IMG/VR virus record: IMGVR_UViG_3300026885_000050
Coordinates: 1 to 13,958 of that record
DNA length: 13,958 nucleotides
Direction: 5' to 3' (one strand)
In this document: positions 3-13,801 of the stretch, piece after piece
How the letters are laid out: each line of letters starts with the position of its first letter
Position numbering within the stretch: position 1 is the first letter of the stretch
Notes under the pieces: model-generated
What the model saw: only the letters and a program-made list of their open reading frames with translations
Databases searched by the model: none
Told to the model about the DNA's origin: nothing
Position numbers and translations under genes: made by a program

Positions 3-335
3 TGGGCTCAAAGAAATGGCGCACCAGATCAGTTTTATACATATATATCAGGCAGTTATACTGGATATGTGACGTGGCCATATTCTATTGATGGAAATAT
101 ACACATATATACTTTAATAGTTGGCCCAAATGTTAATCCATTAATAACTGAAAGAGATTATACAATTGAAGAAAATTTCACGGGAATGTCAACTACATAC
201 ACTTCTGGTCATTTTGGCCCAAGAGCACATACGGGAACTACGTTCTGGCAATGGGTCAGAGTAAGGGCTTATCCCCCAAACGGGGTAATGCCTTCAAATT
301 CTCAGCTACAAAAGACAATAGTTCTAGTTGCGTGA
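3..335 (+). CDS. 3' end of a large virion structural/terminal-fibre protein (SIRV2 ORF1070-like), truncated by the window start
   Basis: The frame is open from nt 3 (WAQRNGAPDQFYTYISGSYTGYVTWPY...) to TGA at 333-335, so the track's GTG at 69 is internal. Beta-rich T/G/Y/W composition. Position directly before the ORF564-like gene matches recalled rudivirus gene order. Confidence 0.7.
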   Translation, partial: WAQRNGAPDQFYTYISGSYTGYVTWPYSIDGNIHIYTLIVGPNVNPLITERDYTIEENFTGMSTTYTSGHFGPRAHTGTTFWQWVRVRAYPPNGVMPSNSQLQKTIVLVA

Positions 336-342
336 GCTAAAA

Positions 343-2133: not shown

Positions 2134-2610
2134 TTTGCAAAATACAAATTCTCTATTATCATCTGTAATAAAAGTTAGAACAGTTCCGTAAAGTTTTCGC
2201 ATTAAATCAAAACGGTTTTTTGTCCAATCATGAATTGCAATACAGAATTGTTTGTATTTCTGTAATTGAGAAAAATCTAATTTAGCCTCACAGCCTTCAC
2301 AATCCATAACTAGAATGTCAGTGTTTGGATATTCTATACCTTTCCATTCTCCATTTATATCAACTTTGTCACAGATATTGAAATCTTTACAAACAATTTC
2401 CTTAAATTTCTTGTTTAATTGTTCTTCTTTTTCGTAACCGATTATTCTCTTAGCACCTTTTAAGAGGAAATATAAAGCTGAACTTCCGCAATCGTTACCG
2501 ATTATCGTTACAGTTCTATCTTTCACATCTAATTTTCCATAAGCTAAATCAAACTCATGCCAATAACAACATTCTAACTTACAAAAATAATCTTTAAAAT
2601 TTATAGGCAT
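2128..2610 (-). CDS. SAM-dependent methyltransferase, FkbM-like (SIRV ORF158-like)
   Basis: Motif I-like TVTIIGNDCGSSALYF, then GAKRIIGYE (acidic residue ending beta2) and ILVMDCEGCE (FkbM-type D-x-EG-x-E). ATG overlaps the upstream TAA (TAATG). Confidence 0.8.
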   Translation of the reverse strand: MPINFKDYFCKLECCYWHEFDLAYGKLDVKDRTVTIIGNDCGSSALYFLLKGAKRIIGYEKEEQLNKKFKEIVCKDFNICDKVDINGEWKGIEYPNTDILVMDCEGCEAKLDFSQLQKYKQFCIAIHDWTKNRFDLMRKLYGTVLTFITDDNREFVFCKL

Positions 2611-3536
2611 TATTGAACAACCTCAAATAATGCATAAACTTTACACTTTCCTGTAGCCCATGCATAAACATTAGCTGGATTATTTACATGAATTTCCAAA
2701 CTATCATTTGGCAAAATTGGGAAATTATTGTATAAATTATTTCCAATATAGACAATATAATTACTCAAATTCTGAAGAATTATTCTTACAGTTTCAATTG
2801 GCGGGCCAGTGTATAACTGTGAAGGTGTTGTATTTACATCTAATTGAAGTCCTTCTATTGTTGGAGGCGATAAATACAAAGAAAGTTTATTTAACGTATT
2901 AACTAATCCGACTGTGGCTAAATAGACATATGTAAGCGTATAAGCTATAGAATCAGCAATAAAATAAATCGCATTTTGTAACGGAATTCCTAATCTTTTA
3001 GCTATTGAATCTATTAATTCATAAAATGAAGTATAGAAATTCTGTAAATCTTCTTTTATTATAGTTCTAGCTTGTTCAACATTTGAAATTAAATAATTTA
3101 CAACATTATAAATTGTCTCATATAAAGCGGTTGTATCTTTCTCTAAAATTGAAGTGGCAGTCGGAACAGCAACTATAATTTTTTCATAAATTTCTTCTGG
3201 TAACTTAACAATTGAATAGTATAACTGTTCATTCGAATACAGAATTGCATTTATTTGTTGTCCAGCTGTAGCTATAAATCCAGCGATATATATCGGGTCT
3301 TCTTCTGTAAGAACTGGCTGTCCAGCTACATAAATTTCATCATAAAAATTTCCAGAACTGGCAATTATAGAACCTGGAATTGTTAGATTTCCATTTTGTA
3401 GAATTGAAGTTACAGCATTACCGCCAGTTAAATAAAGTTCGGTCAAAAGTAGAACTGCAGTGTTCCACATTCCAGATGTCAGTCTCTGGAAAGGTGATGC
3501 TAATAAACTTGAGATTGAGGCATAAGTAATGCTCAT
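2610..3536 (-). CDS. Conserved rudivirus protein (SIRV2 ORF309-like), possibly virion-associated
   Basis: 308-aa ORF with its own TATA-GTCAT promoter 17 nt upstream of the ATG, translationally coupled to the methyltransferase. Size and position match recalled SIRV order. Confidence 0.7.
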   Translation of the reverse strand: MSITYASISSLLASPFQRLTSGMWNTAVLLLTELYLTGGNAVTSILQNGNLTIPGSIIASSGNFYDEIYVAGQPVLTEEDPIYIAGFIATAGQQINAILYSNEQLYYSIVKLPEEIYEKIIVAVPTATSILEKDTTALYETIYNVVNYLISNVEQARTIIKEDLQNFYTSFYELIDSIAKRLGIPLQNAIYFIADSIAYTLTYVYLATVGLVNTLNKLSLYLSPPTIEGLQLDVNTTPSQLYTGPPIETVRIILQNLSNYIVYIGNNLYNNFPILPNDSLEIHVNNPANVYAWATGKCKVYALFEVVQ

Positions 3537-3550
3537 AATTTTAAATTCCT

Positions 3551-3570
3551 AAAATGACATAAATAAGATC
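3551..3570 (-). promoter_or_regulatory. TATA-GTCAT promoter for 3536-2610
   Basis: Minus strand reads GATCTTATTTATGTCAT, 17 nt before the ATG (leaderless spacing). Confidence 0.65.
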
Positions 3571-3630
3571 ACAATTCTTATTTAACATATAATGTATATT
3601 TGCTGATTTCATTGTTCTCACAAAAAATTA

Positions 3631-3650
3631 TCAATATTTTAATTTGTCAT
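3631..3650 (+). promoter_or_regulatory. TATA-GTCAT promoter for the glycosyltransferase operon
   Basis: ATATTTTAATTTGTCAT, 17 nt before ATG 3668. Confidence 0.65.
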
Positions 3651-3667
3651 GAAACTGAAAATTAATT

Positions 3668-4273
3668 ATGAAAGTTTTCACTTTTGCGGGCTATACAAAA
3701 CATCTTCCAGAATTAGATTTTGATTATGTAGTTGTAGATAAGACATTTAACGATTTAACTCCAAAGCTAGAGCAAAAATTTAGAGATAAGATAATCTGGA
3801 ATGAAACAAACAGTGAAATCAGATGGGTCAGAATAGCTAAACAATTGTTGAAAATTTTAGATATAGCTAAAACTTTAGATGATGACATTTTTGCAATAAT
3901 TGATAGTGATTTAATAGTCCCAAAATTGCGTGAAATAGACCCTTTAAATAGAATTCTCACGCTTTGTTACTGGCTTTATTATAGTTGGGCTAACGAAATT
4001 AGACCATTTTGTTCTGGAACTAATTATATATTTAGAAAAAATCAAATTCCAATTTTTGAAATTATATTAAATACTTATTTGGAAAAAGAATATTACAAAG
4101 AAATTCCAGTAGATATTTTCATTCATGACCATATTCTCCATGTAAATGTGGCTAAATTAGGGACTATACATTATGTGAAAACTCCATGTGATGAAAAGAA
4201 AATGGAATTTAAATTTGAAGATATACCACAATTGTTTGAACATATTCCAGAATTTGTATTAATAATTTGGTGA
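3668..4273 (+). CDS. Putative GT-A fold glycosyltransferase
   Basis: DYVVVDKT, a DxD motif after a hydrophobic strand (IFAIIDSDL), FCSGTNYIF and PVD..IH. Adjacent to a GT-B gene, as in SIRV. Confidence 0.7.
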   Translation: MKVFTFAGYTKHLPELDFDYVVVDKTFNDLTPKLEQKFRDKIIWNETNSEIRWVRIAKQLLKILDIAKTLDDDIFAIIDSDLIVPKLREIDPLNRILTLCYWLYYSWANEIRPFCSGTNYIFRKNQIPIFEIILNTYLEKEYYKEIPVDIFIHDHILHVNVAKLGTIHYVKTPCDEKKMEFKFEDIPQLFEHIPEFVLIIW

Positions 4274-4281
4274 GGTCAAAT

Positions 4282-4398
4282 ATGGAGTTCTTTAATTCAA
4301 AATTAAGACCGAACCAATGCAAATTTGAAATTATGAGTTTGAAAGTTATGGAAATGGTTTCAAATTATAAACTCAAAATTAAGCACATGGTGAAATAA
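4282..4398 (+). CDS. Small 38-aa hypothetical protein (MEFFNSKLRPNQCKFEIMSLKVMEMVSNYKLKIKHMVK), not in ORF track
   Basis: Strong archaeal SD GGTGAGGT (4269-4276) overlapping the upstream stop, ATG 4282, TAA 4396-4398 ending 2 nt before the next ATG. Fills the gap almost exactly. Confidence 0.55.
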   Translation: MEFFNSKLRPNQCKFEIMSLKVMEMVSNYKLKIKHMVK

Positions 4399-4400
4399 AA

Positions 4401-5465
4401 ATGGCAAATATTATATATTACGTTTATCCACAACATCATGATGTTAGTTTTAAATTTGTAGCTAAAGAACATATAAAAATGCTAAAAGAGAGATATACAG
4501 TTTACGAAATCCCAGCTTTATCTTTCTATCAATTTACTCCTTTTCGTTACCCGATTTCTATAATTCATCCGTTCTTTTATTCAATGTGGCATTGGGGAAA
4601 AATAGAATTTTCTTTCTTTGAGCAATATAGAACTAAAACAAGTGCAATAATAGGCGTTGAAGTTGCTGACAGTGACAGAATTTCCGAGAAATTCATAGAT
4701 TATGCTAATAACTATGCTGATAGACTAATTGTAAATTCTGAATGGTCAGTTAAAACATTCAAGAACTCTGGTCTGAAAATTCCAATATTTAAAGTTGTAC
4801 ATAACTTTAACGAGAGACTTTTAGTAAAAGATGAGGAACTAAAAGTTGATGAACAAATTCGTTATATTGAGAAAATCAAAAATGAGAAGAAAATAAAACT
4901 AATTTTCATATCATTATGGCATTCTGATTATAGAAAAGGTGCAGATTTATTCCACAATATAGCTAGACAACTTCAGAAGGAAAGGAATGACATTTATTTT
5001 TTAGTAAAAAGTGGTGGGCCGAGGACAGATTTTCAAGACTTAAGAATGTTCAATCTGACTGGAAATACAGATTTTGATAACATTGTAAAGATGTATAGAA
5101 TTTCTGACTTATATCTTCTAACTAGCAGAGGTGGGAGTTTCGAGTTAAACGGTCTGGAAGCTTTTGTGTCAAAAATTCCAACAATCGCCACAAAAGGCGG
5201 GGCATGGGAAGAATATTTTCCTCCACAATTGAAAGATTTACTAATTGATTCTTGTAATTTCCCAACAATTCTTCCAAATAATCCAATTCATATAGGAAAA
5301 GGCGTAGAAATATGTATTGACAAAGCTGTGGATAAAGTTCTTGAAGTTTTAGACAATCTTGATGAATATAAAGCTAAAATTGAGGAAAATTATAATTTCT
5401 GGATTGAGAATTTTAGTTATAAAACTGTAAAAAAACAACTTTTTAATTCTTTAGATGGACTTTAA
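4401..5465 (+). CDS. GT-B (GT4 / group 1) glycosyltransferase (SIRV2 ORF356-like)
   Basis: ADRLIVNSEWS, RKGADL, SDLYLLTSRGGSFELNGLEAFVSKIPTIATKGG (GT4-type C-terminal donor-binding motif). SD GGTGA at 4389-4393. Confidence 0.9.
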   Translation: MANIIYYVYPQHHDVSFKFVAKEHIKMLKERYTVYEIPALSFYQFTPFRYPISIIHPFFYSMWHWGKIEFSFFEQYRTKTSAIIGVEVADSDRISEKFIDYANNYADRLIVNSEWSVKTFKNSGLKIPIFKVVHNFNERLLVKDEELKVDEQIRYIEKIKNEKKIKLIFISLWHSDYRKGADLFHNIARQLQKERNDIYFLVKSGGPRTDFQDLRMFNLTGNTDFDNIVKMYRISDLYLLTSRGGSFELNGLEAFVSKIPTIATKGGAWEEYFPPQLKDLLIDSCNFPTILPNNPIHIGKGVEICIDKAVDKVLEVLDNLDEYKAKIEENYNFWIENFSYKTVKKQLFNSLDGL

Positions 5466-5816
5466 AAATTCATGAACTTTTTGTAATTTATCTATATCTT
5501 TATTCTCCACTAATTTCTTAATTTCTTCATTTATCTCATCATATAAATTATTGATTTTGATTAATTCTAAAACTTCTTGAATTAACAAAATTGAGAATTT
5601 GTGAGTTTGTTCAACTATAGTATGGATTTTCTTAGCTAACTTTTCGCTATTGAATTTGTCAAATTCTATAGACAATACGGTATACGAATATTTTGCAATT
5701 ACTTTTTTCTCATTTAAAGTTATAAAAAGTCTGTATTTGTCTTCTACTATTATCTCAGCTTTATTGTTATTCAATCTTACGATTGTATTTTGTCTTAACT
5801 TTAATTCCCTAGTCAT
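5451..5816 (-). CDS. Hypothetical protein, 121 aa (start revised to MTRELK)
   Basis: The track start at 5882 is the GTCAT of the divergent promoter. A TATA-GTCAT element lies 18 nt upstream of ATG 5816. Overlaps the GT4 gene end by 15 nt convergently. Confidence 0.7.
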   Translation of the reverse strand: MTRELKLRQNTIVRLNNNKAEIIVEDKYRLFITLNEKKVIAKYSYTVLSIEFDKFNSEKLAKKIHTIVEQTHKFSILLIQEVLELIKINNLYDEINEEIKKLVENKDIDKLQKVHEFLKSI

Positions 5817-5834
5817 CAATATAATAAAAATATT

Positions 5835-5882
5835 ATGACATTTATATCTCTTTAAATTTTGAGTAATTCTTAAATTGGTCAT
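5835..5882. promoter_or_regulatory. Divergent pair of TATA-GTCAT promoters
   Basis: Minus strand: GATATAAATGTCAT (5835-5848) to ATG 5816. Plus strand: TTCTTAAATTGGTCAT (5867-5882) to ATG 5900. Confidence 0.7.
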
Positions 5883-5899
5883 AAAAACAAACCCATAAT

Positions 5900-7090
5900 A
5901 TGGAATATAAAAGACAAAGTTCGGGAATAATTAAAAGCTTTAATTCTCTAGATATTTTTTCTATAAATCTTTTGTACATGGGCATTATAAGCGGAATAAG
6001 TTATCCAATTTTTGTTTCTCAAATGATGAAAAATGTAAATCTATTAATTGCGGTCTTAATCGGTGCAATTTTCGAAATTCCGTTACTTGTAATGTATTAC
6101 ATTCTAACTAAGAAAATCCCGCTTAACGGCGGTGATTACGCATATATTCGAAACACATTTTCTCCAAAATTTTACACAATTTTCGGAATCTCTTTATGGT
6201 TAATTTATGTATTCTCAGCACCAATTTTAACAGATTTAGTACTTATGAATTTCAATATTCCTCTAATTCAGAAATTCTTAATTTCAGAACTATTATTTGC
6301 TATCGGTTTATTTAGTGTTGTTAAAAAAACAATTTATGCATATATAGTAGACGGATTAGCAATTTTACAAATAATTGTATCGCTAATTTTGCCAATTTCA
6401 AGTTTTCATTTCCAGATACAAAACTTTACAATATCAAATACTTTACTTTCAGCTTTACTATTTGACTTGTCAATGTTTCTCTTCATAAATGCGATTAGTT
6501 ATATAGCCGGAGAAACTAAAAATGTAGATAAAAATGCAAAAATCGGATATTTCTTGAGTTATTTTGTAGTTACCATATTAGCAATATTAGACAGTTTTTC
6601 AAACCTAAATATTCTATTTGTTCTATTTCCAATCTGGTATATGAGTTTCATTTTCGTAAATTCTATAATTCAAACTCGATTAGTCCAAAATATGACGTTT
6701 GATAGAATTCTTCCGGAAAAATTCACGAAAATTACCCCCAATATTTTATTGCTAATCTTCAGTGCAGATACAATTGCTAATGTTCTAGAAAATATCTTAG
6801 GATTTTCAATATCGTTTGGTTTCTCCGGATTGTTATTTATCTTCTGGAACTTCTTAATTGTCAGTTTCGCATTTTTGAAATTGACAAACAATAAACTATT
6901 ATTTTCAACTGTATTAATTAGTTTAATATTGCAGATATTTCTATTCTTCTACTTAGGACTACAAAATCAAATATTCTATAATTTCGTAATAGAAGGAAAT
7001 GCCATATTTACAATATTAAGAATATTGATAATGCCGATAATTGGCGGAATTATATACTTGTTAAGGAGAAAGACAATCCATGGAGAGTAA
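5900..7090 (+). CDS. APC-superfamily amino-acid permease-like membrane protein (SIRV2 ORF399-like)
   Basis: Many hydrophobic TM segments. PLNGGDYAYIRNTF (APC P..GG.Y.Y motif), SYIAGETKN (AGE.KN motif), RLVQNMTFDRILPEKF. Confidence 0.85.
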   Translation: MEYKRQSSGIIKSFNSLDIFSINLLYMGIISGISYPIFVSQMMKNVNLLIAVLIGAIFEIPLLVMYYILTKKIPLNGGDYAYIRNTFSPKFYTIFGISLWLIYVFSAPILTDLVLMNFNIPLIQKFLISELLFAIGLFSVVKKTIYAYIVDGLAILQIIVSLILPISSFHFQIQNFTISNTLLSALLFDLSMFLFINAISYIAGETKNVDKNAKIGYFLSYFVVTILAILDSFSNLNILFVLFPIWYMSFIFVNSIIQTRLVQNMTFDRILPEKFTKITPNILLLIFSADTIANVLENILGFSISFGFSGLLFIFWNFLIVSFAFLKLTNNKLLFSTVLISLILQIFLFFYLGLQNQIFYNFVIEGNAIFTILRILIMPIIGGIIYLLRRKTIHGE

Positions 7091-7092
7091 AA

Positions 7093-8028
7093 ATGAAGTT
7101 AGTTTTCGGACTAAGTTCGCCGACTTCTTATATTTTAAAGACAAATTTTCCAATTCTAATTAATCAATTAAGATTTAGAACAAAGACATGGAAAAATGAG
7201 ACTTGGGTCGACAGCGGGGGCTATCAAATTACAATTCATGGTCTAGAAATCTCAGTTGATGACGTCTTACAAAAATACAAAATGATAGACGCTTATGCAT
7301 TTTTTTCTCTAGATATACCTAGCATATTTTCTCCACTTGATAAAAAGAATTTCGAATATTTCGAATATCTTTATACAAAAATTGAGTATATAGAAAAAAT
7401 TATACCAGTAATTCATATTTATCCAATTCAAGATATAGATGAAGCTATAGATTTTTATAAACAATATACTTATTATTTTGCAGTTGGAGGACTTATAGCA
7501 TCTTCAAAAATGAAAATTTTGATATATACTTTTCCGTGGATCTATTACATAAGGAGGAAGGTTCCATATCTTCACGTTCTAGGAATGTCAGCACCATATT
7601 TTATTCAAGCCTTTGACTTTGCTGAGAGCATGGACACAGCTACATATAGCAAAGTAACGGGCTATAGAGATATTTTTTGGTTTGATGGGTCTAGAAGATA
7701 TGTAGGCAATCAAAAGACAGTTAGGGAAAAATATAAACTTACTGAGGAAGAGAAAGAGAAACTTTTCGAATTTCTGGACAAGATTAATTTCCCATTCGAA
7801 TATGATTTATCAAACAGAAAAATTATAGAAGTTATGAACGCTTATATTCTAATATACAATAATTGGAAGATTGATAATAAATATACAAGATATGCTGACA
7901 AACTTAGGAAAATGGGACTAGACAGCCTTGTAATGGAGTTAATTAGAAATTATAAAATTGCTAATGAGATATTGAAAGAGAAAAGGAAAATAAAGAAAGA
8001 AGAAGATGAATTAGAACTTGAGATATAA
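7093..8028 (+). CDS. tRNA-guanine transglycosylase-like / DpdA-like protein (SIRV2 ORF310-like)
   Basis: TGT catalytic signature VDSGGYQ, then SLDIP, IIPVIH, FAVGG, LHVLG, SMDTAT (second catalytic Asp). Starts 2 nt after the permease stop. Confidence 0.85.
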   Translation: MKLVFGLSSPTSYILKTNFPILINQLRFRTKTWKNETWVDSGGYQITIHGLEISVDDVLQKYKMIDAYAFFSLDIPSIFSPLDKKNFEYFEYLYTKIEYIEKIIPVIHIYPIQDIDEAIDFYKQYTYYFAVGGLIASSKMKILIYTFPWIYYIRRKVPYLHVLGMSAPYFIQAFDFAESMDTATYSKVTGYRDIFWFDGSRRYVGNQKTVREKYKLTEEEKEKLFEFLDKINFPFEYDLSNRKIIEVMNAYILIYNNWKIDNKYTRYADKLRKMGLDSLVMELIRNYKIANEILKEKRKIKKEEDELELEI

Positions 8029-8045
8029 AAATTCATATTTTCACA

Positions 8046-8624
8046 TCATTCTTCTTCAACATCAACATCACTAACATCAATATCATCAATAACATTTTCA
8101 TCATTAATAATCTTGATAGCATCTTCTATTTTATCTTTAAATTCTGCTTTAATTTCCTCAGAGCTTAACAGACCATAAACTTCATTACTTAAAGCTTCAG
8201 AAATTGTATCTACATTTATTTCTTCTAAATTTACAAAAATACATAAATCCAAATATCCATAAGCCTCTAGTATATTATCTATGTATCTTTTGACAATTCT
8301 CTTTTTTTCTTCTTCTGGAAAATCAAATTCAACAATAACTTCTTCAAATGCATAATTTAATTCATCAATTTGTTTGTTTAATTGTATCATAATTTTAGAA
8401 TTTTTCATGAATGCATTGAATAATTCTTGTAATTCCTTTTCATCAAAATATTGTAAATTCCAATTATCTTTTTCTACAATTTCTGAAATCATTTGGATTA
8501 TTGCATCTGCTACAATATCTTTAAAATTTGTATAACAATTTTGAATAATATTATCAACATTTAACCATATAACAATATTTTTCTTAAATCTTTCTTTATC
8601 TAATCCTCTTAAAACTATACTCAT
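8046..8624 (-). CDS. Highly acidic hypothetical protein, 192 aa
   Basis: Intact ORF, D/E-rich with tail DENVIDDIDVSDVDVEEE. Upstream TTTTTAAATATGTCAT promoter (8650-8665, minus) and SD-like GTGA. Confidence 0.8.
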   Translation of the reverse strand: MSIVLRGLDKERFKKNIVIWLNVDNIIQNCYTNFKDIVADAIIQMISEIVEKDNWNLQYFDEKELQELFNAFMKNSKIMIQLNKQIDELNYAFEEVIVEFDFPEEEKKRIVKRYIDNILEAYGYLDLCIFVNLEEINVDTISEALSNEVYGLLSSEEIKAEFKDKIEDAIKIINDENVIDDIDVSDVDVEEE

Positions 8625-8649
8625 ATCACATCATTCTTCTTTTTCGAAT

Positions 8650-8666
8650 ATGACATATTTAAAAAC
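8650..8666 (-). promoter_or_regulatory. TATA-GTCAT promoter for 8624-8046
   Basis: Minus strand TTTTTAAATATGTCAT, 25 nt before the ATG. Confidence 0.6.
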
Positions 8667-8688
8667 ATTTTTACTCTTATTTTTAAAT

Positions 8689-8868
8689 ATGATAATTTAT
8701 TCCAAGAATGGAAATAGGATAATTGTCAAAGTAATTTTTGAAATAGAAAATATGAATAATGATGACAATTTGAATGAAATAATAGCTAATTGTTTGATTA
8801 ATTTAGCAAATCGGATAAAAGAAAATAAAGTTAGAATTTATAATTCTAAAGATTTAGGAACATATTAA
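8689..8868 (+). CDS. Small hypothetical protein, 59 aa (probable start MIIYSK)
   Basis: Fills the gap between divergent genes. The track ATG at 8650 is part of the minus-strand GTCAT motif. TTTAAAAA at 8658-8665 is at leaderless spacing from ATG 8689. Confidence 0.45.
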   Translation: MIIYSKNGNRIIVKVIFEIENMNNDDNLNEIIANCLINLANRIKENKVRIYNSKDLGTY

Positions 8869-8882
8869 CTTTTTAATGTCAT
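8868..8882 (+). promoter_or_regulatory. TATA-GTCAT promoter for 8907-9617
   Basis: CTTTTTAATGTCAT, 24 nt before the ATG. Confidence 0.6.
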
Positions 8883-8906
8883 AAAACAAATACAATTTGA
8901 CCTAAA

Positions 8907-9617
8907 ATGAGGAAATTCCATACACATACAAACGAAATTAAAGTTGATACATCTATACCACAAAACGCGAATCTTCTATGGCAAAATGACAAATTAGCGT
9001 TATATTATAACTACAATTCTTTCCAAGGAAAAGTAGATTGGATAATGCAAAACAAAACTAATTCTCCAATACTTGTATCGCTTTTACGTGGCGGGATATT
9101 AAGCGAAAATAACCAAATGTACACAATTCCAAATTATCTTTTTGGCAATGCTTTCGCTGAAGTTTACTTTGCTAATGAACTCTCAAGCTTTATAACTAAT
9201 TTGCAAAACATTCCGCTTTATTCTCTAGCTATTGTTAGAGACAAATATTACGATAGAACTATAGCTTTTGTCTTCCAAATTCCAGCAAATTCTGTGATAA
9301 TAGCTCCAGAATATGGATTTACTGGGTTACAAAGTTTGTTTGGCGAATTACTAGAAGTAACTCCAATTAATCAAAATCTATTTACAATAGTTTATGATTT
9401 TGCGGAAATTATAGAATACGAATATCAAAGCGGGATTTTAGTAAATTATCCTCCAGACCCATATATAGTTCAAAGCTTTGAATTTCTAATAGATAAATTA
9501 GGAGAAATAATGACTCCAAGATTAATATTAGAAATACCAGAAACTGATATAAATACTGTAAAATCTTTAGTTTCAGATATACAAAAAATCATAGACAGAT
9601 TGAAGAAGATATTTTAA
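8907..9617 (+). CDS. Hypothetical protein, 236 aa, predicted beta-rich with amphipathic C-terminal helix
   Basis: Intact ORF with own promoter and downstream T-tract. No motif recognised. Confidence 0.8.
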   Translation: MRKFHTHTNEIKVDTSIPQNANLLWQNDKLALYYNYNSFQGKVDWIMQNKTNSPILVSLLRGGILSENNQMYTIPNYLFGNAFAEVYFANELSSFITNLQNIPLYSLAIVRDKYYDRTIAFVFQIPANSVIIAPEYGFTGLQSLFGELLEVTPINQNLFTIVYDFAEIIEYEYQSGILVNYPPDPYIVQSFEFLIDKLGEIMTPRLILEIPETDINTVKSLVSDIQKIIDRLKKIF

Positions 9618-9656
9618 GCAATACAATTTGTATTTTTTGAAAATCAAAGTTCTCTT

Positions 9657-9675
9657 AAAGTTTTATATTTGTCAT
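9657..9675 (+). promoter_or_regulatory. TATA-GTCAT promoter for the wHTH gene
   Basis: AAAGTTTTATATTTGTCAT (purine-rich BRE, TATA, GTCAT). Confidence 0.65.
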
Positions 9676-9702
9676 ATTTCTTTTTTATATATTTGATATA
9701 AA

Positions 9703-9948
9703 ATGACTGAACCACAAGGAAAAAAAATTAGATTAGGAAAAAAAGAAAAAGAATTATTAGATTTTTTAAAAAAATATCCAGACGGAATTTGGAGAGACGA
9801 ATTAATAAAACATTTTGTTCATAGTACCGATTATTATGACTTTTTTATGGACAGATTGTATAATTTGGAGCAAAAAGGATTTATAGAAATAAAAAAGGTA
9901 ACAAATCCAGAAACTGGAAGAAAAAAATTACGTGTTTATTTGAAATAA
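9703..9948 (+). CDS. Winged helix-turn-helix DNA-binding protein, 81 aa
   Basis: LGKKEKELLDFLKKYPDGIWRDEL...RLYNLEQKGFIEIKK...GRKKLRVYL is a typical MarR/ArsR-like wHTH pattern with a basic wing. Confidence 0.8.
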   Translation: MTEPQGKKIRLGKKEKELLDFLKKYPDGIWRDELIKHFVHSTDYYDFFMDRLYNLEQKGFIEIKKVTNPETGRKKLRVYLK

Positions 9949-9951
9949 TGA

Positions 9952-9965
9952 TTTTTTTGTTTTTT
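9952..9965 (+). terminator. Oligo-T terminator after the wHTH gene
   Basis: TTTTTTTGTTTTTT a few nt after TAA 9948. Confidence 0.55.
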
Positions 9966-10158
9966 AATGATGGAAACAATGACTCCATAAATCTACAAAA
10001 ATCCCGGTTATAATTATCAATTGAAAAATCACAATCAATTTTAGAATCTCGTTTTGAACAGAAAAGTAGAGAATAAAAGATAGAATAAAGAGAATTACTA
10101 AGCCATAAAGATCATGAGTTTTCCCGTGAAGGAAATAATATCACATTCTACAACTCAT
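9964..10158 (-). pseudogene. 64-codon two-TM membrane protein gene interrupted by in-frame TGA at codon 6 (pseudogene, sequencing error or readthrough)
   Basis: Translation MSCRM*YYFLHGKTHDLYGLVILFILSFILYFSVQNEILKLIVIFQLIIITGIFVDLWSHCFHH. TGA at 10141-10143. TATA-GTCAT promoter 16 nt upstream of the ATG. Confidence 0.7.
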
Positions 10159-10174
10159 AAATACAAGTTTAAAA

Positions 10175-10190
10175 ATGACAATTAAAAAGC
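10175..10190 (-). promoter_or_regulatory. TATA-GTCAT promoter for the interrupted 10158-9964 gene
   Basis: Minus strand GCTTTTTAATTGTCAT, 16 nt before the ATG. Confidence 0.65.
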
Positions 10191-10194
10191 TATT

Positions 10195-10209
10195 AAAAAA
10201 TTAAAAAAA
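10195..10209 (-). terminator. Oligo-T terminator of the five-gene acr operon
   Basis: Minus strand TTTTTTTAATTTTTT directly after TAA at 10212. Confidence 0.55.
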
Positions 10210-10211
10210 GA

Positions 10212-10535
10212 TTAATCTTCATAATATTCTATAATAAGTCTGTTTATCGGTATATCGTTTTCAGTTACTATTTTCATTGTTTCTCTTGGCTTTAAAACTA
10301 GCAATTGGAATAATTCGTCTAGATTTTTAACTCCTAATTCTTCATATGGTATAAAATAAATATCGAAAATTCCACGGCTATCTTCATGTTGGACTAGGCA
10401 ATATTTGTCTTGATAATCTGAGATATAACATGTATATTCATTAGTAAAGATAATTTCAAAATTATTCTTATGTTTAAAAATTATAATATCTCCAACTGTA
10501 TCGGCTAATTCAAAACATAATTTATAATTTCTCAT
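10212..10535 (-). CDS. Hypothetical acidic protein, 107 aa (anti-defence candidate)
   Basis: SD GGTGAG shortly before the ATG. Last gene of the operon with the AcrIIIB1-like genes. Confidence 0.8.
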   Translation of the reverse strand: MRNYKLCFELADTVGDIIIFKHKNNFEIIFTNEYTCYISDYQDKYCLVQHEDSRGIFDIYFIPYEELGVKNLDELFQLLVLKPRETMKIVTENDIPINRLIIEYYED

Positions 10536-10548
10536 TATCTCACCACAT

Positions 10549-10776
10549 TTATCTTTTACAAATTACATATTTCCAACCGTTATCATTTACTAATACAACT
10601 TCTCTTTTATTTTCTGGACATTGATCAATTGTTGATAAGGGTAATGCATAAGCTTTATAGTGATCACAACTATTTGTAAGCGGGAAATAATTAGACGTTT
10701 TTATTAATAATTCCCTATGACATATCGGACATTTATAAACAATTAAATCTCCAAATTTCTCAACTTTTAATTCCAT
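10549..10776 (-). CDS. Small putative Zn-binding protein (CPIC...SCDH), paralog 1, 75 aa
   Basis: SD GAGGTGA (contains the track's GTG) precedes ATG 10776 (MELKVEK). Motif shared with 13076-13330 and 13526-13801. Confidence 0.8.
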   Translation of the reverse strand: MELKVEKFGDLIVYKCPICHRELLIKTSNYFPLTNSCDHYKAYALPLSTIDQCPENKREVVLVNDNGWKYVICKR

Positions 10777-10788
10777 AACTTTCACCTC

Positions 10789-11481
10789 TTATTCTTGTTT
10801 TTTAGATTTTAAATATATAATTAAGTAATGTTTTTCCGGATTTAACATCACTTTGTTTTCTTGATTATCTGGAGTTTTTATTGTTAATTCTTTAACTCCT
10901 TTAGCATACATAAAATATGCTATATTCGGCTTTGAGATTAGACCGGTTATCTCAACATTTTTCGAAAACTTTAGCTCATAATTCTCAATTGTTAGTTCAT
11001 TTTTAATATCAAAATTAAGTTCATTGGTATATTTTAGCATTGGAGTTTCGTAAATTTCTAATTGCCTATTCTTATAAATCAACGGGAATTGGTATAATTG
11101 TCCTTTCACATATTTATCTAAAATCATTATTTGTTTTTCATCATAATTAATGAGCAATCTTTTTTCTTCCAAATCATAAAATTCTATAATTCTCATAATG
11201 AGGTCTGTCAAATCATTTAGATTTTCAGCAAATCTTCCACGTGAAGATATAAAGATTTTTGGCGGTGCAGTTATATAATATATGCCCCTAGCTTCTGCTA
11301 AAGCATAATTAATTAATTCATAACAACCGCTGAACTTTCTTCCAGATTTAGAAATATATTTTGCACAATCAATATAATCGCCTTGAACTGTACTAATCTT
11401 GGTAACTTGACCTTCTATATGTTTAACCATAAAGACTTTTGGAAGGTAATTTAGATATTTTAGAATTTTTACCTCAGACAT
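10789..11481 (-). CDS. acrIIIB1: Anti-CRISPR AcrIIIB1-like protein (SIRV2 gp48 family), paralog B
   Basis: EVKILKYLNYLPKVFM, DCAKYISKSGRKFSGC, RGIYY, LLINYD..I.ILDKYVKGQLYQFPLI match motifs I recall from SIRV2 gp48 (EVK.IK.LN.LP.VF; NCA.Y.SRSG....GC; GIYFTP; YD.Y.KG..Y.FPL). Full-length similarity to 11767-12489. Confidence 0.8.
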   Translation of the reverse strand: MSEVKILKYLNYLPKVFMVKHIEGQVTKISTVQGDYIDCAKYISKSGRKFSGCYELINYALAEARGIYYITAPPKIFISSRGRFAENLNDLTDLIMRIIEFYDLEEKRLLINYDEKQIMILDKYVKGQLYQFPLIYKNRQLEIYETPMLKYTNELNFDIKNELTIENYELKFSKNVEITGLISKPNIAYFMYAKGVKELTIKTPDNQENKVMLNPEKHYLIIYLKSKKQE

Positions 11482-11487
11482 CTTAAC

Positions 11488-11757
11488 TCACTCTTCTTCT
11501 ATTTCTTCTTCTACATCTTTTATATATTCTAATGCCATCTTTATTGTATTCTCGAGATTGTCAATTATTTCATGGAAAAAGTAATCTAAAATATCGTTTT
11601 TAACAAACGTAATAAGTAGATATTGTTTTCCTTCTTTGTCAACTGTAATTTGGGCAGTCCAAATTTCCACATCTTTTGGAAAATCTGGAAATTCTTTAAC
11701 CATCTTCATGACTTCTTCCCTTACATCTTTTATTGGGTTATATTTATATTCAACCAT
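11488..11757 (-). CDS. Small acidic hypothetical protein, 89 aa (anti-defence candidate)
   Basis: SD GGTGAG overlaps the upstream TAG. ATG 11757 (MVEYKY) preferred to GTG 11766. Tail DVEEEIEEE. Sandwiched between the two AcrIIIB1-like genes. Confidence 0.8.
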   Translation of the reverse strand: MVEYKYNPIKDVREEVMKMVKEFPDFPKDVEIWTAQITVDKEGKQYLLITFVKNDILDYFFHEIIDNLENTIKMALEYIKDVEEEIEEE

Positions 11758-11766
11758 ATTTCTCAC

Positions 11767-12489
11767 CTAAGTCCTAGGTTTTGGGTGAGTTATTAAATAG
11801 TATTTGTTAACTTTTAGCATAACTGTATCTGTAGAACTTGTTGGCGATTTTAAAGTCAATGTCACTTCATTTTCCGGATGTATTAAAAATGCCACGCCGG
11901 GGTCTGAATATAAATCTCTAGTTAATGTAGGACTGGAAAACTGTATTTCGTGATGATAAATTGTTAGGCTATTGGAATGATTAAAACTAAGATTTAAATC
12001 ATTATTTATTGGCGGAACTTCATAAATTTCTAGATAATCTTGGTTGTATATTAGGTTAAATTGGTACAATTGACCTTTAATATAGTAATCGTAAATTGTT
12101 ATCGAATAATTATCATAGGAAATCAATAATTCTTTAAATCTGAGGTTTAGAAGTTCTATCTCTTTTAGTATAATGTTTTTCATATCCTCAAGACTTCTAG
12201 TAATTTTACTTCTTTTGTTAACTGAAAATATCGGTGGTGCTGGAGTATAATATATGCCTCTGGTCTGTAGAAGCTCATCTTCAAGATATTTAAAACAACC
12301 GCTGAAAGTTAATCTAGATCTTGAAATATAATTTGTGCAATTTTCGAAATATTTTGCTAATATTGAGATCTTGGTAACCTCACCATCAAGATGTTTTATC
12401 ATGAAGACTGATGGCAGATATTCTATTTGCTTTAGTATTTTTACTTCATATTTTTTAGTTTGACTTTCTTGACTTGAATTTTGAGACAT
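11767..12489 (-). CDS. acrIIIB1: Anti-CRISPR AcrIIIB1-like protein (SIRV2 gp48 family), paralog A
   Basis: EVKILKQIEYLPSVFM, NCTNYISRSRLTFSGC, GIYYTP, LLISYDNYSITIYDYYIKGQLYQF, PGVAFLIHPE and C-terminal THPKPR (recalled gp48 SHPRPR). SD GGGTGA upstream. Confidence 0.85.
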   Translation of the reverse strand: MSQNSSQESQTKKYEVKILKQIEYLPSVFMIKHLDGEVTKISILAKYFENCTNYISRSRLTFSGCFKYLEDELLQTRGIYYTPAPPIFSVNKRSKITRSLEDMKNIILKEIELLNLRFKELLISYDNYSITIYDYYIKGQLYQFNLIYNQDYLEIYEVPPINNDLNLSFNHSNSLTIYHHEIQFSSPTLTRDLYSDPGVAFLIHPENEVTLTLKSPTSSTDTVMLKVNKYYLITHPKPRT

Positions 12490-12522
12490 TTAATCTATCA
12501 CCCGCAAAATAACATATGCATT

Positions 12523-12545
12523 ATGACAAATTTAAAACTTCTTTT
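12523..12545 (-). promoter_or_regulatory. BRE-TATA-GTCAT promoter of the acr operon
   Basis: Minus strand AAAAGAAGTTTTAAATTTGTCAT, 33 nt before ATG 12489, with an SD in the leader. Confidence 0.7.
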
Positions 12546-12582
12546 ATCTTTCAAAAATTTTAACATTAATCATCATGACTTT

Positions 12583-12648
12583 GAATTTCTATGAATTTCG
12601 AATTTTTATCTACAAACTGAGAAAAATCGCTGATAGCTTTAGCTAAAT
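12583..12648. repeat. Partial copy of the intergenic cassette repeat
   Basis: GAATTTTTATCTACAAACTGAGAAAAAT...GCTAAAT versus GAATTTTTATCACAAAACTGAGAAAAAT (about 12998-13025) and GGCTAAAT (about 13493). Confidence 0.75.
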
Positions 12649-12707
12649 ATGGCCCGAAAAAAAGCAAACTAATGACTTTGAACTTGAAAACTAAAAAAAC
12701 GTTTAAC

Positions 12708-12875
12708 TTACCAACAGTCAGATAAATATTTCCTAACTGTCCTCTCTGTAACGCCTAAAAATGAGGCGATCTCTGCAATGCTATAACCTTGTCTTGCAAG
12801 CTCATGGACTATTGAAATCATATCGTCTCTCGAATTTATGTAATACTTTGTCTGACCGATTTGCACAACTTTCAT
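12708..12875 (-). CDS. HTH DNA-binding protein, SIRV1 ORF56a / SIRV2 Gp1 family, 55 aa
   Basis: MKVVQIGQTKYYINSRDDMISIVHELARQGYSIAEIASFLGVTERTVRKYLSDCW has a clear HTH and matches the recalled family pattern (YY..S.DD..S..HELA..GY....IA..LGV.ER.VR.YL..C). ATG 12875 preferred to TTG 12890. Confidence 0.85.
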   Translation of the reverse strand: MKVVQIGQTKYYINSRDDMISIVHELARQGYSIAEIASFLGVTERTVRKYLSDCW

Positions 12876-13075: not shown

Positions 13076-13330
13076 TTAAGATGGGCTTTGTTTGGGATAT
13101 AAAATATAAATGCTTGTTCCAGACCAAATCCTCAGTACAGCGTTTTTATTGAGTCTTTGTGCGTTCAATTCATAATAAAGATTACCAAACTCTCTCCACT
13201 CAAAATGCTGACATGAAGATTTTATTACGCCACCATCATATTCATTTGTCCATGCTAGCTCTGTGTTATCAATTGGACAATAATAGACTATAATTTGACC
13301 GTGATATTTCTCAATTGGACGTATTACCAT
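13076..13330 (-). CDS. Small putative Zn-binding protein (CPID...SCQH), paralog 2, 84 aa
   Basis: Own promoter (13365-13381), GGGGG SD-like tract and terminator. Motif shared with the two paralogs. Confidence 0.8.
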   Translation of the reverse strand: MVIRPIEKYHGQIIVYYCPIDNTELAWTNEYDGGVIKSSCQHFEWREFGNLYYELNAQRLNKNAVLRIWSGTSIYILYPKQSPS

Positions 13331-13525: not shown

Positions 13526-13801
13526 TTAACTTTTACGAGGAACGATAAAACTTACATACTTTTTGAACTCAAACTTCATTACCGCTTTCGCTTCATATTT
13601 TGGAATATTCTGAGAACTTTTCGGGTCACGATATACATCAATGATTTCAAAATGACTGCATGAAGATAACGGTTCAACAACATCTTTATGGAATTTTCTA
13701 AGAAAATATTCTGGATCGTTCGTAGCTAATATGTCTCCACAAATTGGACACTTGATATAGATTTTCTTGTCCACATGTTCAACTTTTAGTTGATACTTCA
13801 T
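13526..13801 (-). CDS. Small putative Zn-binding protein (CPIC...SCSH), paralog 3, 91 aa
   Basis: Intact ORF with own promoter and terminator. Motif shared with the two paralogs. Confidence 0.8.
   Translation of the reverse strand: MKYQLKVEHVDKKIYIKCPICGDILATNDPEYFLRKFHKDVVEPLSSCSHFEIIDVYRDPKSSQNIPKYEAKAVMKFEFKKYVSFIVPRKS

What the first reader, a model, noticed from the sequence alone, without database searches (positions are those of the whole stretch)
10789..12489. Two diverged AcrIIIB1-like paralogs in one operon
Seen: the 240-aa and 230-aa proteins are alignable throughout (EVKILK..YLP.VFM.KH..G.VTKIS; C..YIS.S...FSGC; RGIYY..APP; KGQLYQF.LIY) and share nucleotide blocks such as AACAACCGCTGAA (about 11323 and 12294), indicating a duplication. 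The C-terminal halves diverge: paralog A ends THPKPRT, as I recall for SIRV2 gp48, whereas B ends IYLKSKKQE. Known: AcrIIIB1 inhibits type III-B Cmr complexes. Inference: the second copy may have shifted to a different Cmr variant, a Csm complex or another host, or the two may form a heteromer.
Basis: partly seen in the sequence, partly recalled or inferred. Interest (0 to 1): 0.75.

Follow-up and report, generated by a model that had tools for sequence, protein, structure and literature searches.

The report
Two AcrIIIB1-family anti-CRISPR paralogs, one operon
A hot-spring archaeal rod-shaped virus carries, in one early anti-defence operon, a conventional copy and a long-diverged but well-preserved second copy of the known anti-CRISPR protein AcrIIIB1, a modest extension of a known family rather than a new kind of system.

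Summary
Window 11767-12489(-) encodes a 240-aa protein (A) and 10789-11481(-) a 230-aa protein (B). They are 43% identical over 225 residues without gaps (E 5e-63). Both are significant homologs of SIRV2 gp48 (AcrIIIB1; E 2e-36 and 1e-19) and fall in phrog_6092 with it. Their AlphaFold models share one all-beta fold, which matches only other family members.

A, ORF92, B, ORF78 and ORF107 are packed 3-16 nt apart. They lie behind a single anti-defence-type BRE/TATA promoter next to an Aca8 homolog, and end at a T-run.

A is the conservative ortholog of the single-copy Usarudivirus gene. B belongs to a separate, unannotated clade known only from metagenomes. That clade is as strongly constrained as A (dN/dS 0.10-0.21 against 0.09-0.20) but has replaced 18 of 51 ancestrally conserved residues, including the C-terminal HPxPR tail.

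Related contigs carry a third (C) or even a fourth paralog in the same array.

SIRV1 already has two 42%-identical copies, so paralogy in this family is known.

Any shift in target is inferred, not shown.

The parts
12490..12707 (-). Regulatory region upstream of paralog A. It holds a distal conserved box (12600-12620) and a purine-rich BRE plus TATA box (12529-12544, AAAGAAGTTTTAAATT), about 40 nt upstream of the ATG, with a GGTGA Shine-Dalgarno-like element.
   Evidence: It aligns with the upstream regions of ORF91, ORF84 and the aca8 homolog. The BRE/TATA core occurs 4 times in the window against 0.25 expected, only at these four places. The distal box has 3 hits against 0.03 expected. It matches the description of the anti-defence early promoter in PMC11065993.
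11767..12489 (-). Paralog A, 240 aa. It is the conservative AcrIIIB1-family member and the ortholog of the single-copy Usarudivirus gene (SIRV4-11).
   Evidence: 62-64% identity to the SIRV4-11 genes that PMC11065993 lists as AcrIIIB1. 32% identity to SIRV2 gp48, E 2e-36. phrog_6092, E 2.5e-78. Keeps 44 of 51 ancestrally conserved residues and the HPKPR tail. omega 0.09-0.20. AF2 model pLDDT 90.7.
11488..11766 (-). ORF92 (probably 89 aa from the ATG at 11757). A conserved small protein with an acidic C-terminus (EEEIEEE) and no known function. It occupies the variable slot between A and B.
   Evidence: 74-100% conserved in 8 or more related contigs. No Pfam, PHROG or NCBIfam match. Not a remnant of the AcrIIIB1 family (hhalign probability 0.7%). 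Its slot holds paralog C, or nothing, in other contigs.
10789..11481 (-). Paralog B, 230 aa. A member of a distinct, metagenome-only AcrIIIB1-family clade with a YLK-type C-terminus in place of HPxPR.
   Evidence: 43% identity to A. 27% identity to gp48, E 1e-19. phrog_6092, E 5e-46. The B clade is monophyletic 100/100 on a stem of about 1.1-1.2 substitutions per site. Orthologs are 77-94% identical with more than 100 invariant positions. omega 0.10-0.21. Keeps 33 of 51 ancestral residues. AF2 model pLDDT 91.4, with the same order of secondary-structure elements as A. Its fold hits are the same two family members.
10549..10785 (-). ORF78 (probably 75 aa from the ATG at 10776). A small C-x2-C...C-x-H zinc-ribbon-like protein, related to ORF84 and ORF91 and to predicted anti-defence cluster ADG.12.
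   Evidence: Mutual BLASTP E about 2e-4 with ORF84 and ORF91. The profile hits SIRV8 gp60 at 24 bits, and that gene is listed as ADG.12 in PMC11065993. Present downstream of B in most related contigs.
10212..10535 (-). ORF107, the last gene of the operon. Function unknown.
   Evidence: Conserved at 51-96% identity downstream of B in nearly all related contigs. No family match. Not in the gp47/AcrIA3 family phrog_21188.
10190..10211 (-). T-rich run (TCTTTTTTTAATTTTTT) directly after the ORF107 stop. Presumed archaeal terminator of the five-gene unit.
   Evidence: Read directly from the sequence. Similar T-runs follow ORF91, ORF84 and aca8. In SIRV8 the homologous downstream DNA (89.5% identity up to window position 10209) starts right after the stop of the A-type gene.
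12708..12875 (-). Aca8 homolog (55 aa, HTH). Presumed repressor of the shared early promoters.
   Evidence: 58% identity, E 2e-24, to the C-terminal 55 aa of SIRV2 gp54/Aca8. HTH Pfam hits. phrog_7067, E 6e-31. The Aca8 re-annotation and proposed role come from PMC11065993.

Best explanation
The region is a five-gene early anti-defence operon in the right terminal arm of a Usarudivirus-like rudivirus (IMG/VR UViG_3300026885_000050). A single strong BRE/TATA promoter of the type shared by rudiviral anti-defence genes drives A, ORF92, B, ORF78 and ORF107 as one transcript. The neighbouring Aca8 homolog presumably shuts this promoter off later.

A is the orthodox AcrIIIB1 ortholog. By homology it most likely binds the host type III-B Cmr effector complex, and possibly also inhibits type I-A, as SIRV2 gp48 does.

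B is a second, anciently diverged family member. It keeps the same fold and about two thirds of the family's conserved core, but has fixed a different set of residues, including a different C-terminal tail. It has since been held under purifying selection as strong as A's.

The most likely reading is that B is a functional inhibitor with a shifted binding specificity, for example another Cmr variant, or one of the two activities (III-B against I-A) that gp48 combines. The array would then widen the range of host CRISPR-Cas effectors the virus can block. Related viruses extend the same array with a third (C) or fourth paralog.

Shown: the homology, fold, operon anatomy, conservation, selection and recombination. 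Inferred: co-transcription, early timing, Aca8 control, Acr activity of A, and any difference in target between A and B.
For: Homology to gp48. All copies fall in phrog_6092 together with gp48. The fold is shared and family-specific.

Operon anatomy: gaps of 3-16 nt, GGTGA-like ribosome-binding sites before the internal genes, and a T-run only after ORF107. The BRE/TATA core occurs only before ORF91, ORF84, aca8 and A, and none occurs before B. The upstream regions align with each other. Aca8 homolog.

The module recurs in more than 15 independent metagenome contigs.

Selection: omega is 0.09-0.20 for A and 0.10-0.21 for B between the same genome pairs.

Divergence: B is a distinct clade (100/100) outside the A-type clade (98/98). 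A keeps 44 of 51 ancestrally conserved columns, B 33 and C 21. There are 16 sites conserved within A and within B but different between them, including H235->Y and P236->L of the tail.

Literature: gp48 is expressed early, binds Cmr-alpha and Cmr-gamma, and also inhibits I-A. The Usarudivirus orthologs of A are catalogued as AcrIIIB1.
Against: No activity has been measured for any Usarudivirus homolog in the material I could read. A is only 32% identical to gp48 and B only 27%, so even A's Acr activity is an extrapolation.

No structure of AcrIIIB1 or of its complex with Cmr is available, so the changed residues cannot be mapped to an interface.

The timing of the A/B split is uncertain. The AU test does not clearly reject a duplication within this lineage followed by acceleration (p=0.084 for B plus the co-occurring A genes; p=0.038 with C added), and treekit flagged the joins as long-branch joins.

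Co-transcription is inferred from spacing only. An A/T-rich TATA-like stretch inside the 3' end of ORF92 could be an internal promoter.

The BRE/TATA pattern was derived from the four sites it then finds.
Confidence: 0.6

Rival explanations
1. A and B form an obligate heteromer. The two paralogs are subunits of one inhibitor, and neither works alone.
For: They are co-encoded in one operon, which would give matched expression. They co-occur across many contigs. Both A (in genomes that also have B) and B have lost the otherwise conserved His of the S-P-D-H motif, which could reflect co-adaptation.
Against: SIRV2 gp48 acts as a single gene product, and most family members are single-copy.

A and B have discordant histories. 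L010 and L029 have an identical B (dS 0) while their A genes differ at dS 0.50.

B is found with quite different partners. It pairs with A genes only 58% identical to the window's A (L037), and it sits next to ORF92, next to C, or directly after A.

A complex prediction could not be run with the tools at hand.
Confidence: 0.15
2. Redundant copies with the same target. B is a backup or dosage copy that binds the same Cmr complex as A.
For: Same fold and same family. 55 positions are conserved and identical in both clades.
Against: Pure redundancy is not expected to hold two copies at 43% identity under equally strong purifying selection. B has also fixed clade-specific replacements at 18 of 51 ancestrally conserved positions, including the C-terminal motif.
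Confidence: 0.15
3. B (and C) have left CRISPR inhibition altogether. They would use the AcrIIIB1 fold against another host defence, or for a non-defence early function.
For: Loss of the family-wide HPxPR tail and of a third or more of the conserved core. The operon partners are uncharacterised (ORF92, ORF107) or belong to a predicted anti-defence cluster of unknown target (ORF78 / ADG.12). The anti-defence promoter type also drives genes that are not Acrs, for example an antitoxin mimic (PMC11065993).
Against: No positive evidence for any other target. The simplest expectation for a family member in the same operon is a related target.
Confidence: 0.09
4. B is a decaying duplicate (pseudogene in the making).
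For: One related contig (L035) has a frameshifted B.
Against: B is intact and full-length in about 20 contigs from different samples. omega is 0.03-0.21. More than 100 positions are invariant. The AF2 model is confident.
Confidence: 0.01

Closest known systems
SIRV2 gp48 = AcrIIIB1 (also reported as AcrIA4). An anti-CRISPR of Rudiviridae and Lipothrixviridae that binds type III-B Cmr effector complexes.
   Same: Significant full-length sequence homology (A: 32% identity, E 2e-36; B: 27%, E 1e-19). Same PHROG. Similar length (230-250 aa). Location in the terminal anti-defence region behind an early BRE/TATA promoter near aca8. A also keeps the C-terminal HP(K/R)PR motif.
   Different: gp48 is monocistronic and single-copy in SIRV2. 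Here there are two copies in a five-gene operon. B lacks the C-terminal motif and has replaced about a third of the conserved core. gp48 carries an insertion of about 17 residues (around 'YLIYYENNEEKKELNKDL') that is absent from A and B. No activity data exist for A or B.
SIRV1 gp40 (ORF241) and gp41 (ORF252), two adjacent AcrIIIB1 homologs.
   Same: Two family members side by side on the same strand in the same genome arm, 42% identical to each other. That is almost exactly the A/B divergence. Both are catalogued as AcrIIIB1.
   Different: The SIRV1 copies are separated by 234 nt, and the published table treats each as a promoter-associated gene in its own right. Both keep the SH-x-P-(R/K) tail. 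In the tree, gp41 groups with SIRV2 gp48 and gp40 branches separately, and neither is related to clade B or C. The best reading is that the two-copy states have separate origins.
Single-copy AcrIIIB1 homologs of Usarudivirus SIRV4-SIRV11 (for example SIRV8 gp56, SIRV10 gp45).
   Same: Orthologs of A: 62-64% identity, the same 240-aa length, and the same position relative to the conserved 81-aa and 236-aa genes.
   Different: In those viruses the gene stands alone. The DNA homologous to the window's post-operon spacer begins right after its stop codon. ORF92, B, ORF78 and ORF107 (about 1.55 kb, 10212-11766) are therefore an extra block here.
The AcrID1 paralog expansions in SIRV1, SIRV2 and SIRV3.
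   Same: The same phenomenon: an archaeal-virus Acr family multiplied within one genome's terminal regions, with functional diversification suspected (PMC11065993).
   Different: An unrelated protein family (about 95-120 aa). Those copies are mostly separate transcription units.

Membership tests
AcrIIIB1 family (SIRV2 gp48-like; phrog_6092) | Significant full-length sequence similarity to SIRV2 gp48 | tested here: met
   A: BLASTP 32% identity, E 2e-36. B: 27% identity, E 1e-19. The tblastn hit lands on SIRV2gp48/ORF249. A, B, C and gp48 all match phrog_6092 (E 2.5e-78, 5e-46, 9e-41 and 8e-93).
AcrIIIB1 family (SIRV2 gp48-like; phrog_6092) | Same three-dimensional fold as other family members | tested here: met
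   The AF2 models of A and B (pLDDT 90.7 and 91.4) have the same order of strands and one helix. Foldseek against BFVD hits only the SIRV1 homolog (TM 0.81 / 0.79) and the ARV2 homolog (TM 0.67 / 0.73). This compares predictions with predictions, because no experimental structure exists.
AcrIIIB1 family (SIRV2 gp48-like; phrog_6092) | Family-wide invariant core (K40, C51, C65, Y80, F144 in A numbering) | tested here: met
   These are invariant in all 55 aligned sequences, including A, B and C.
AcrIIIB1 family (SIRV2 gp48-like; phrog_6092) | Conserved C-terminal (S/T)-H-x-x-P-(R/K) tail. This trait was observed here in gp48, gp40, gp41, SIFV and all A-type genes. It is not a published criterion. 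| tested here: inconclusive
   A meets it (THPKPRT). B does not (conserved HYLIxYLK), and neither does C. It is not known whether this tail is needed for activity.
AcrIIIB1 family (SIRV2 gp48-like; phrog_6092) | Encoded in the terminal anti-defence region behind the shared early (BRE + TTTAWATA) regulatory sequence, near aca8 | tested here: met
   The A operon is preceded by the shared regulatory sequence, with an Aca8 homolog immediately upstream (description). B has no such promoter of its own and depends on co-transcription, which is inferred.
AcrIIIB1 family (SIRV2 gp48-like; phrog_6092) | [quoted passage not shown] | not testable with these tools
   This needs infection or complementation assays and pull-downs. 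It is known only for SIRV2 gp48.
AcrIA3 (SIRV2 gp47), considered for ORF107 | Sequence membership of the gp47 family (phrog_21188) | tested here: not met
   gp47 and SIRV1 gp39 hit phrog_21188 at E 1e-61 or better, and ORF107 does not. The only similarity is a 23-aa BLAST match at E 0.008.

The most novel reading that the evidence does not exclude
The AcrIIIB1 fold is a diversifying scaffold. In this Usarudivirus-like lineage it has radiated into at least three or four functionally distinct inhibitors (A, B, C, X), arranged as a recombining cassette array. B and C would have acquired targets other than the Cmr complexes bound by gp48. One version is that they split gp48's reported dual III-B and I-A activity between them. 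Another is that they hit a Cmr variant or a defence system that gp48 cannot block.
Probability: 0.3. Interest if true: 0.55.

Novelty: new member of a known kind. Interest (0 to 1): 0.35.

Why it matters
AcrIIIB1 is one of very few characterised inhibitors of type III CRISPR-Cas, and its mechanism and structure are still unresolved. This locus offers natural, strongly constrained sequence variants on one scaffold: A (orthodox), B (tail replaced, one third of the core changed) and C (more than half changed), all co-expressed. They form a ready-made comparison set for finding which residues determine target binding. They could also show whether the III-B and I-A activities reported for gp48 can be separated. 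The array adds to the evidence that archaeal viruses expand Acr families into arrays whose members are shuffled by recombination. It does not reveal a new type of system.

Tried and rejected
1. ORF92 as a degraded family member (it contains 'KQYLLITF', which resembles the family's C-terminal 'KYYLITH'). Rejected: hmmsearch scores are about 0-1.5 bits and hhalign probability is 0.7%.

2. ORF107 as the counterpart of SIRV2 gp47/AcrIA3 (similar size, downstream position). Rejected: it belongs to a different PHROG and has only a 23-aa match at E 0.008.

3. 'Ribonuclease T1-related', the old label on SIFV0016. There is no support from Pfam, the PDB sequence search or the fold search.

4. The shared 13-mer as a sign of recent duplication or gene conversion. 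It is not beyond the codon-usage null.

5. Bacterial sigma-70 promoter and hairpin-terminator scans. They give no more hits than chance and do not apply to an archaeal virus.

6. A curated model or solved structure for the family. None exists in Pfam, NCBIfam or the PDB.

7. Showing that B cannot be a recent in-situ copy of A. The AU test is only marginal (p 0.084 and 0.038), so the age of the split stays open.

8. Looking for multi-copy arrays around other deep-branching homologs (P0037, P0061, P0063, P0074). All are single-copy in their contigs.

9. Mapping the changed residues onto the model surface.

10. A first literature query for the original 2019 paper failed on term length. That paper was not read directly, so its findings are cited through later papers.
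Full report
**What the window is.** The 13,958-base window is IMG/VR contig UViG_3300026885_000050, which is the same as JGI contig Ga0208662_100536. It is about 80% identical at the nucleotide level, over positions 250-10,200, to the right arm of the North American Sulfolobus islandicus rod-shaped viruses (Usarudivirus SIRV4-11; SIRV8 is the best match). It carries their glycosyltransferase gene (Pfam) and the regions those records annotate as amino-acid permease and tRNA-ribosyltransferase genes. The part from 10,210 onward does not align at the DNA level with any deposited virus. GC content is 22-30%.

**The observation.** The two ORFs are as described: A at 11767-12489(-), 240 aa, and B at 10789-11481(-), 230 aa.

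The 13-mer is present exactly twice and encodes the shared FSGC. I resampled B's codons from the window's codon usage while keeping its protein sequence. Runs of 13 or more identical bases then arise in 37% of trials, so the block is a by-product of conserved residues. The only residual synonymous signal is a modest excess of identical codons (57 against 46 expected, P=0.006).

Identity is 45% in the N-terminal half and 39% in the C-terminal half, so divergence is spread out rather than C-terminal.

**Homology to AcrIIIB1.** tblastn of A and B against deposited viruses hits one locus in SIRV2, and that locus is SIRV2gp48 (ORF249, NP_666582.1). Direct BLASTP gives 32% identity and E 2e-36 for A, and 27% identity and E 1e-19 for B. 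A, B and gp48 all match phrog_6092 over their full length. No Pfam, NCBIfam or PDB entry covers the family.

A profile search of 1.84 billion representative proteins finds only 81 clusters, so this is a small family. The named members seen here are all viruses or MAGs of Sulfolobales-type hosts.

gp48 ends in ...LFSHPRPRRSGND, not in THPKPRT. The shared feature is an H-P-(K/R)-P-R tail.

**Fold.** AlphaFold2 with a 55-sequence family alignment gives confident models for A (pLDDT 90.7, pTM 0.83) and B (pLDDT 91.4, pTM 0.85). Both have the same succession of about 18 beta-strands and one helix. Neither resembles any solved structure (best PDB E 0.02, TM below 0.2). In the viral predicted-structure library, both match only the SIRV1 and ARV2 family members (TM 0.67-0.81). 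The old 'ribonuclease T1-related' label on the SIFV homolog is unsupported.

**Operon anatomy.** On the minus strand the order is A, ORF92, B, ORF78, ORF107, with intergenic distances of 3-16 nt. GGTGA-like ribosome-binding sequences precede each internal gene. The first long T-run comes directly after ORF107.

Upstream of A lies a regulatory sequence of about 120 nt that is shared with three neighbouring transcription units: ORF91, ORF84 and a 55-aa HTH gene. Its core, AAAGAA-N(1-3)-TTTAWAWW, occurs four times in the window (0.25 expected), once at each of these places and nowhere else. In particular there is none before B. A distal box is shared by three of the units.

The HTH gene (12708-12875) is 58% identical to the functional 55-aa form of SIRV2 Aca8. 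This matches the published description of rudiviral anti-defence early promoters and their presumed repressor (PMC11065993).

Co-transcription, early timing and Aca8 control are therefore inferences from anatomy and from SIRV2, not observations.

**Comparison with relatives.** In SIRV8 and SIRV10 the A-type gene stands alone. The DNA homologous to the window's post-operon spacer begins right after its stop codon. ORF92, B, ORF78 and ORF107 (10212-11766) are thus a block of about 1.55 kb that is present here and absent there.

B's closest deposited relatives are those same A-type genes, at only 42-45% identity. In metagenomes, however, B has its own orthologs at 77-94% identity.

Fetching their contigs shows that the A, ~90-aa ORF, B, ~75-aa ORF, 107-aa ORF module is conserved in many independent JGI, ENA and GenBank assemblies.

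The array is also variable:
- In L024, L027, L031 and L032 (and, on contigs that are cut off, L023, L025 and L028), the slot between A and B holds a third family member, C. It is 231-235 aa, 32-37% identical to A, and abuts B.
- L029 has a fourth, divergent copy upstream of A.
- In L037, A is followed directly by B.

**Phylogeny.** In maximum-likelihood trees of 79 and 94 family members, B (100/100) and C (100/100) are separate clades on long stems (about 1.0-1.2 substitutions per site). They are weakly sister to each other (86/88). Both lie outside the clade that holds all Usarudivirus A-type genes, including the window's A (98/98).

SIRV1's two copies are placed elsewhere. gp41 groups with SIRV2 gp48 and gp40 branches on its own, so the two-copy states look independent.

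There are caveats. treekit flags the joins as long-branch joins. An AU test of 'B groups with the A genes it co-occurs with' gives p=0.084, and p=0.038 when C is included. A duplication within this lineage followed by fast divergence is therefore disfavoured but not excluded, and the tree cannot tell gain of the block from loss.

**Selection.** Nei-Gojobori estimates between the same seven genomes give omega of 0.09-0.20 for A and 0.10-0.21 for B. A further 57 B-only pairs give 0.03-0.21. The B clade has more than 100 invariant positions. Only one contig (L035) has a frameshift. B is therefore a functional gene under constraint as strong as A's.

C evolves faster (omega 0.25-0.70) and has two subtypes.

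Histories are discordant. L010 and L029 share an identical B while their A genes differ at dS 0.50, which indicates recombination inside the array.

**What changed.** I defined 51 ancestrally conserved columns as those conserved both in single-copy A-type genes and in the Icelandic rudivirus and lipothrixvirus homologs. Of these, the A genes of array-bearing viruses keep 44, B keeps 33 and C keeps 21. Sixteen sites are conserved within A and within B but differ between them. They include the two tail residues H235->Y and P236->L. Five positions are invariant in all 55 aligned members, among them two cysteines.

**Interpretation.** The evidence fits a conservative copy (A) that most likely retains the family's known activity, and a derived copy (B) that is functional and has a changed surface. 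The natural reading is a shifted binding specificity.

Known biology makes this plausible. gp48 binds Cmr-alpha and Cmr-gamma, and a 2024 preprint reports that it also inhibits type I-A, so there are several activities that paralogs could divide between them.

An obligate A:B heteromer is less likely because the partners recombine freely and B is found with different neighbours. Pure redundancy is unlikely given long-term constraint at 43% identity. None of this was tested functionally.

**Novelty.** The family, its anti-defence context and a two-copy state are already in the literature. SIRV1 gp40 and gp41 are 42% identical, and both are listed as AcrIIIB1 in Supplementary Data 1 of PMC11065993. 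That paper also notes the family is 'mostly' single-copy.

Three things are not described in anything I could read. First, the B and C clades, which are absent from all deposited virus genomes. Second, their loss of the C-terminal motif. Third, their arrangement as a recombining polycistronic array of two to four paralogs.

I rate this as new members of a known kind and of moderate-to-low general interest. It is useful mainly as a natural variant set for dissecting AcrIIIB1 specificity.

Noticed in passing
L031:3305-4000, L024:251-946, L027:295-990, L032:237-938 (also L023, L025, L028): A third AcrIIIB1-family paralog, 'C' (231-235 aa, 32-37% identical to A), replaces ORF92 between A and B and abuts B's start codon. 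It has two subtypes, lacks the HPxPR tail, and has a 4-residue deletion in the YISRSGxTFSGC motif. It evolves faster than A or B (omega 0.25-0.70).
   Followed up: partly
L029:1150-1875: A fourth, very divergent family member (241 aa, 47% identical to A, ending in HQRPRNRKID) lies upstream of A in a contig that also has A, ORF92 and B. That makes three copies, arranged differently from the A-C-B arrays.
   Followed up: partly
L010 against L029 (A at L010:1268-1984 and L029:2101-2817; B at L010:2276-2968 and L029:3109-3801): The B genes are identical at synonymous sites (dS 0) while the A genes on the same two contigs differ at dS 0.50. This indicates recent recombination between the two paralogs' positions.
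   Followed up: partly
window 10549-10776(-), 13076-13330(-), 13526-13801(-): ORF78, ORF84 and ORF91 are mutually related small proteins with a Y-x-C-P-x-C ... S-C-x-H-(F/Y) zinc-ribbon-like motif (ORF84 lacks the second Cys). Their profile matches SIRV8 gp60 at 24 bits, and that gene is listed as predicted anti-defence cluster ADG.12 in PMC11065993. Two of them have their own early-type promoter, and the third is inside the A-B operon.
   Followed up: partly
window 12708-12875(-): An Aca8 homolog. The mechanical ORF list starts it at a TTG (60 aa), but the ATG at 12875 gives the 55-aa form that matches the re-annotated SIRV2 Aca8. PHROGs labels this family 'terminase small subunit', which looks like a carried-over misannotation.
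   Followed up: partly
L041:1050-1739 and L041:1917-2717: A 266-aa AcrIIIB1 homolog (P0063) lies directly downstream of a 229-aa gene with Csa3_N and HTH domains, that is, a Csa3-like CRISPR regulator. This is of interest because SIRV2 gp47 (AcrIA3), next to gp48, is reported to resemble the Csa3b HTH domain. It is unclear whether the contig is viral or cellular.
   Followed up: no
L035:510-1185: The B ortholog on GenBank metagenome contig LAFM01000992.1 is split by a frameshift near residue 140. It could be a sequencing error or a genuine pseudogene. It is the only broken copy seen.
   Followed up: no
A numbering 217-218 (window about 11836-11841): The D-H of an S-P-D-H motif is conserved in single-copy A-type genes and in gp48-like proteins. 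The His is lost both in A genes from array-bearing viruses (KSPTS) and in B (KTPDN). This could be a sign of relaxed or shared constraint once two copies exist. It remains unexplained.
   Followed up: no
P0131 (535 aa), P0119 (404 aa), P0125 (413 aa): Longer proteins carry an AcrIIIB1-like domain fused to other sequence. The 535-aa case probably corresponds to the fusion (MCI4409744.1-like) mentioned in PMC11065993.
   Followed up: no
window 328-2133(+): A 601-aa ORF in the most AT-rich part of the window (GC 0.21-0.26) has no Pfam match. It was not examined further.
   Followed up: no
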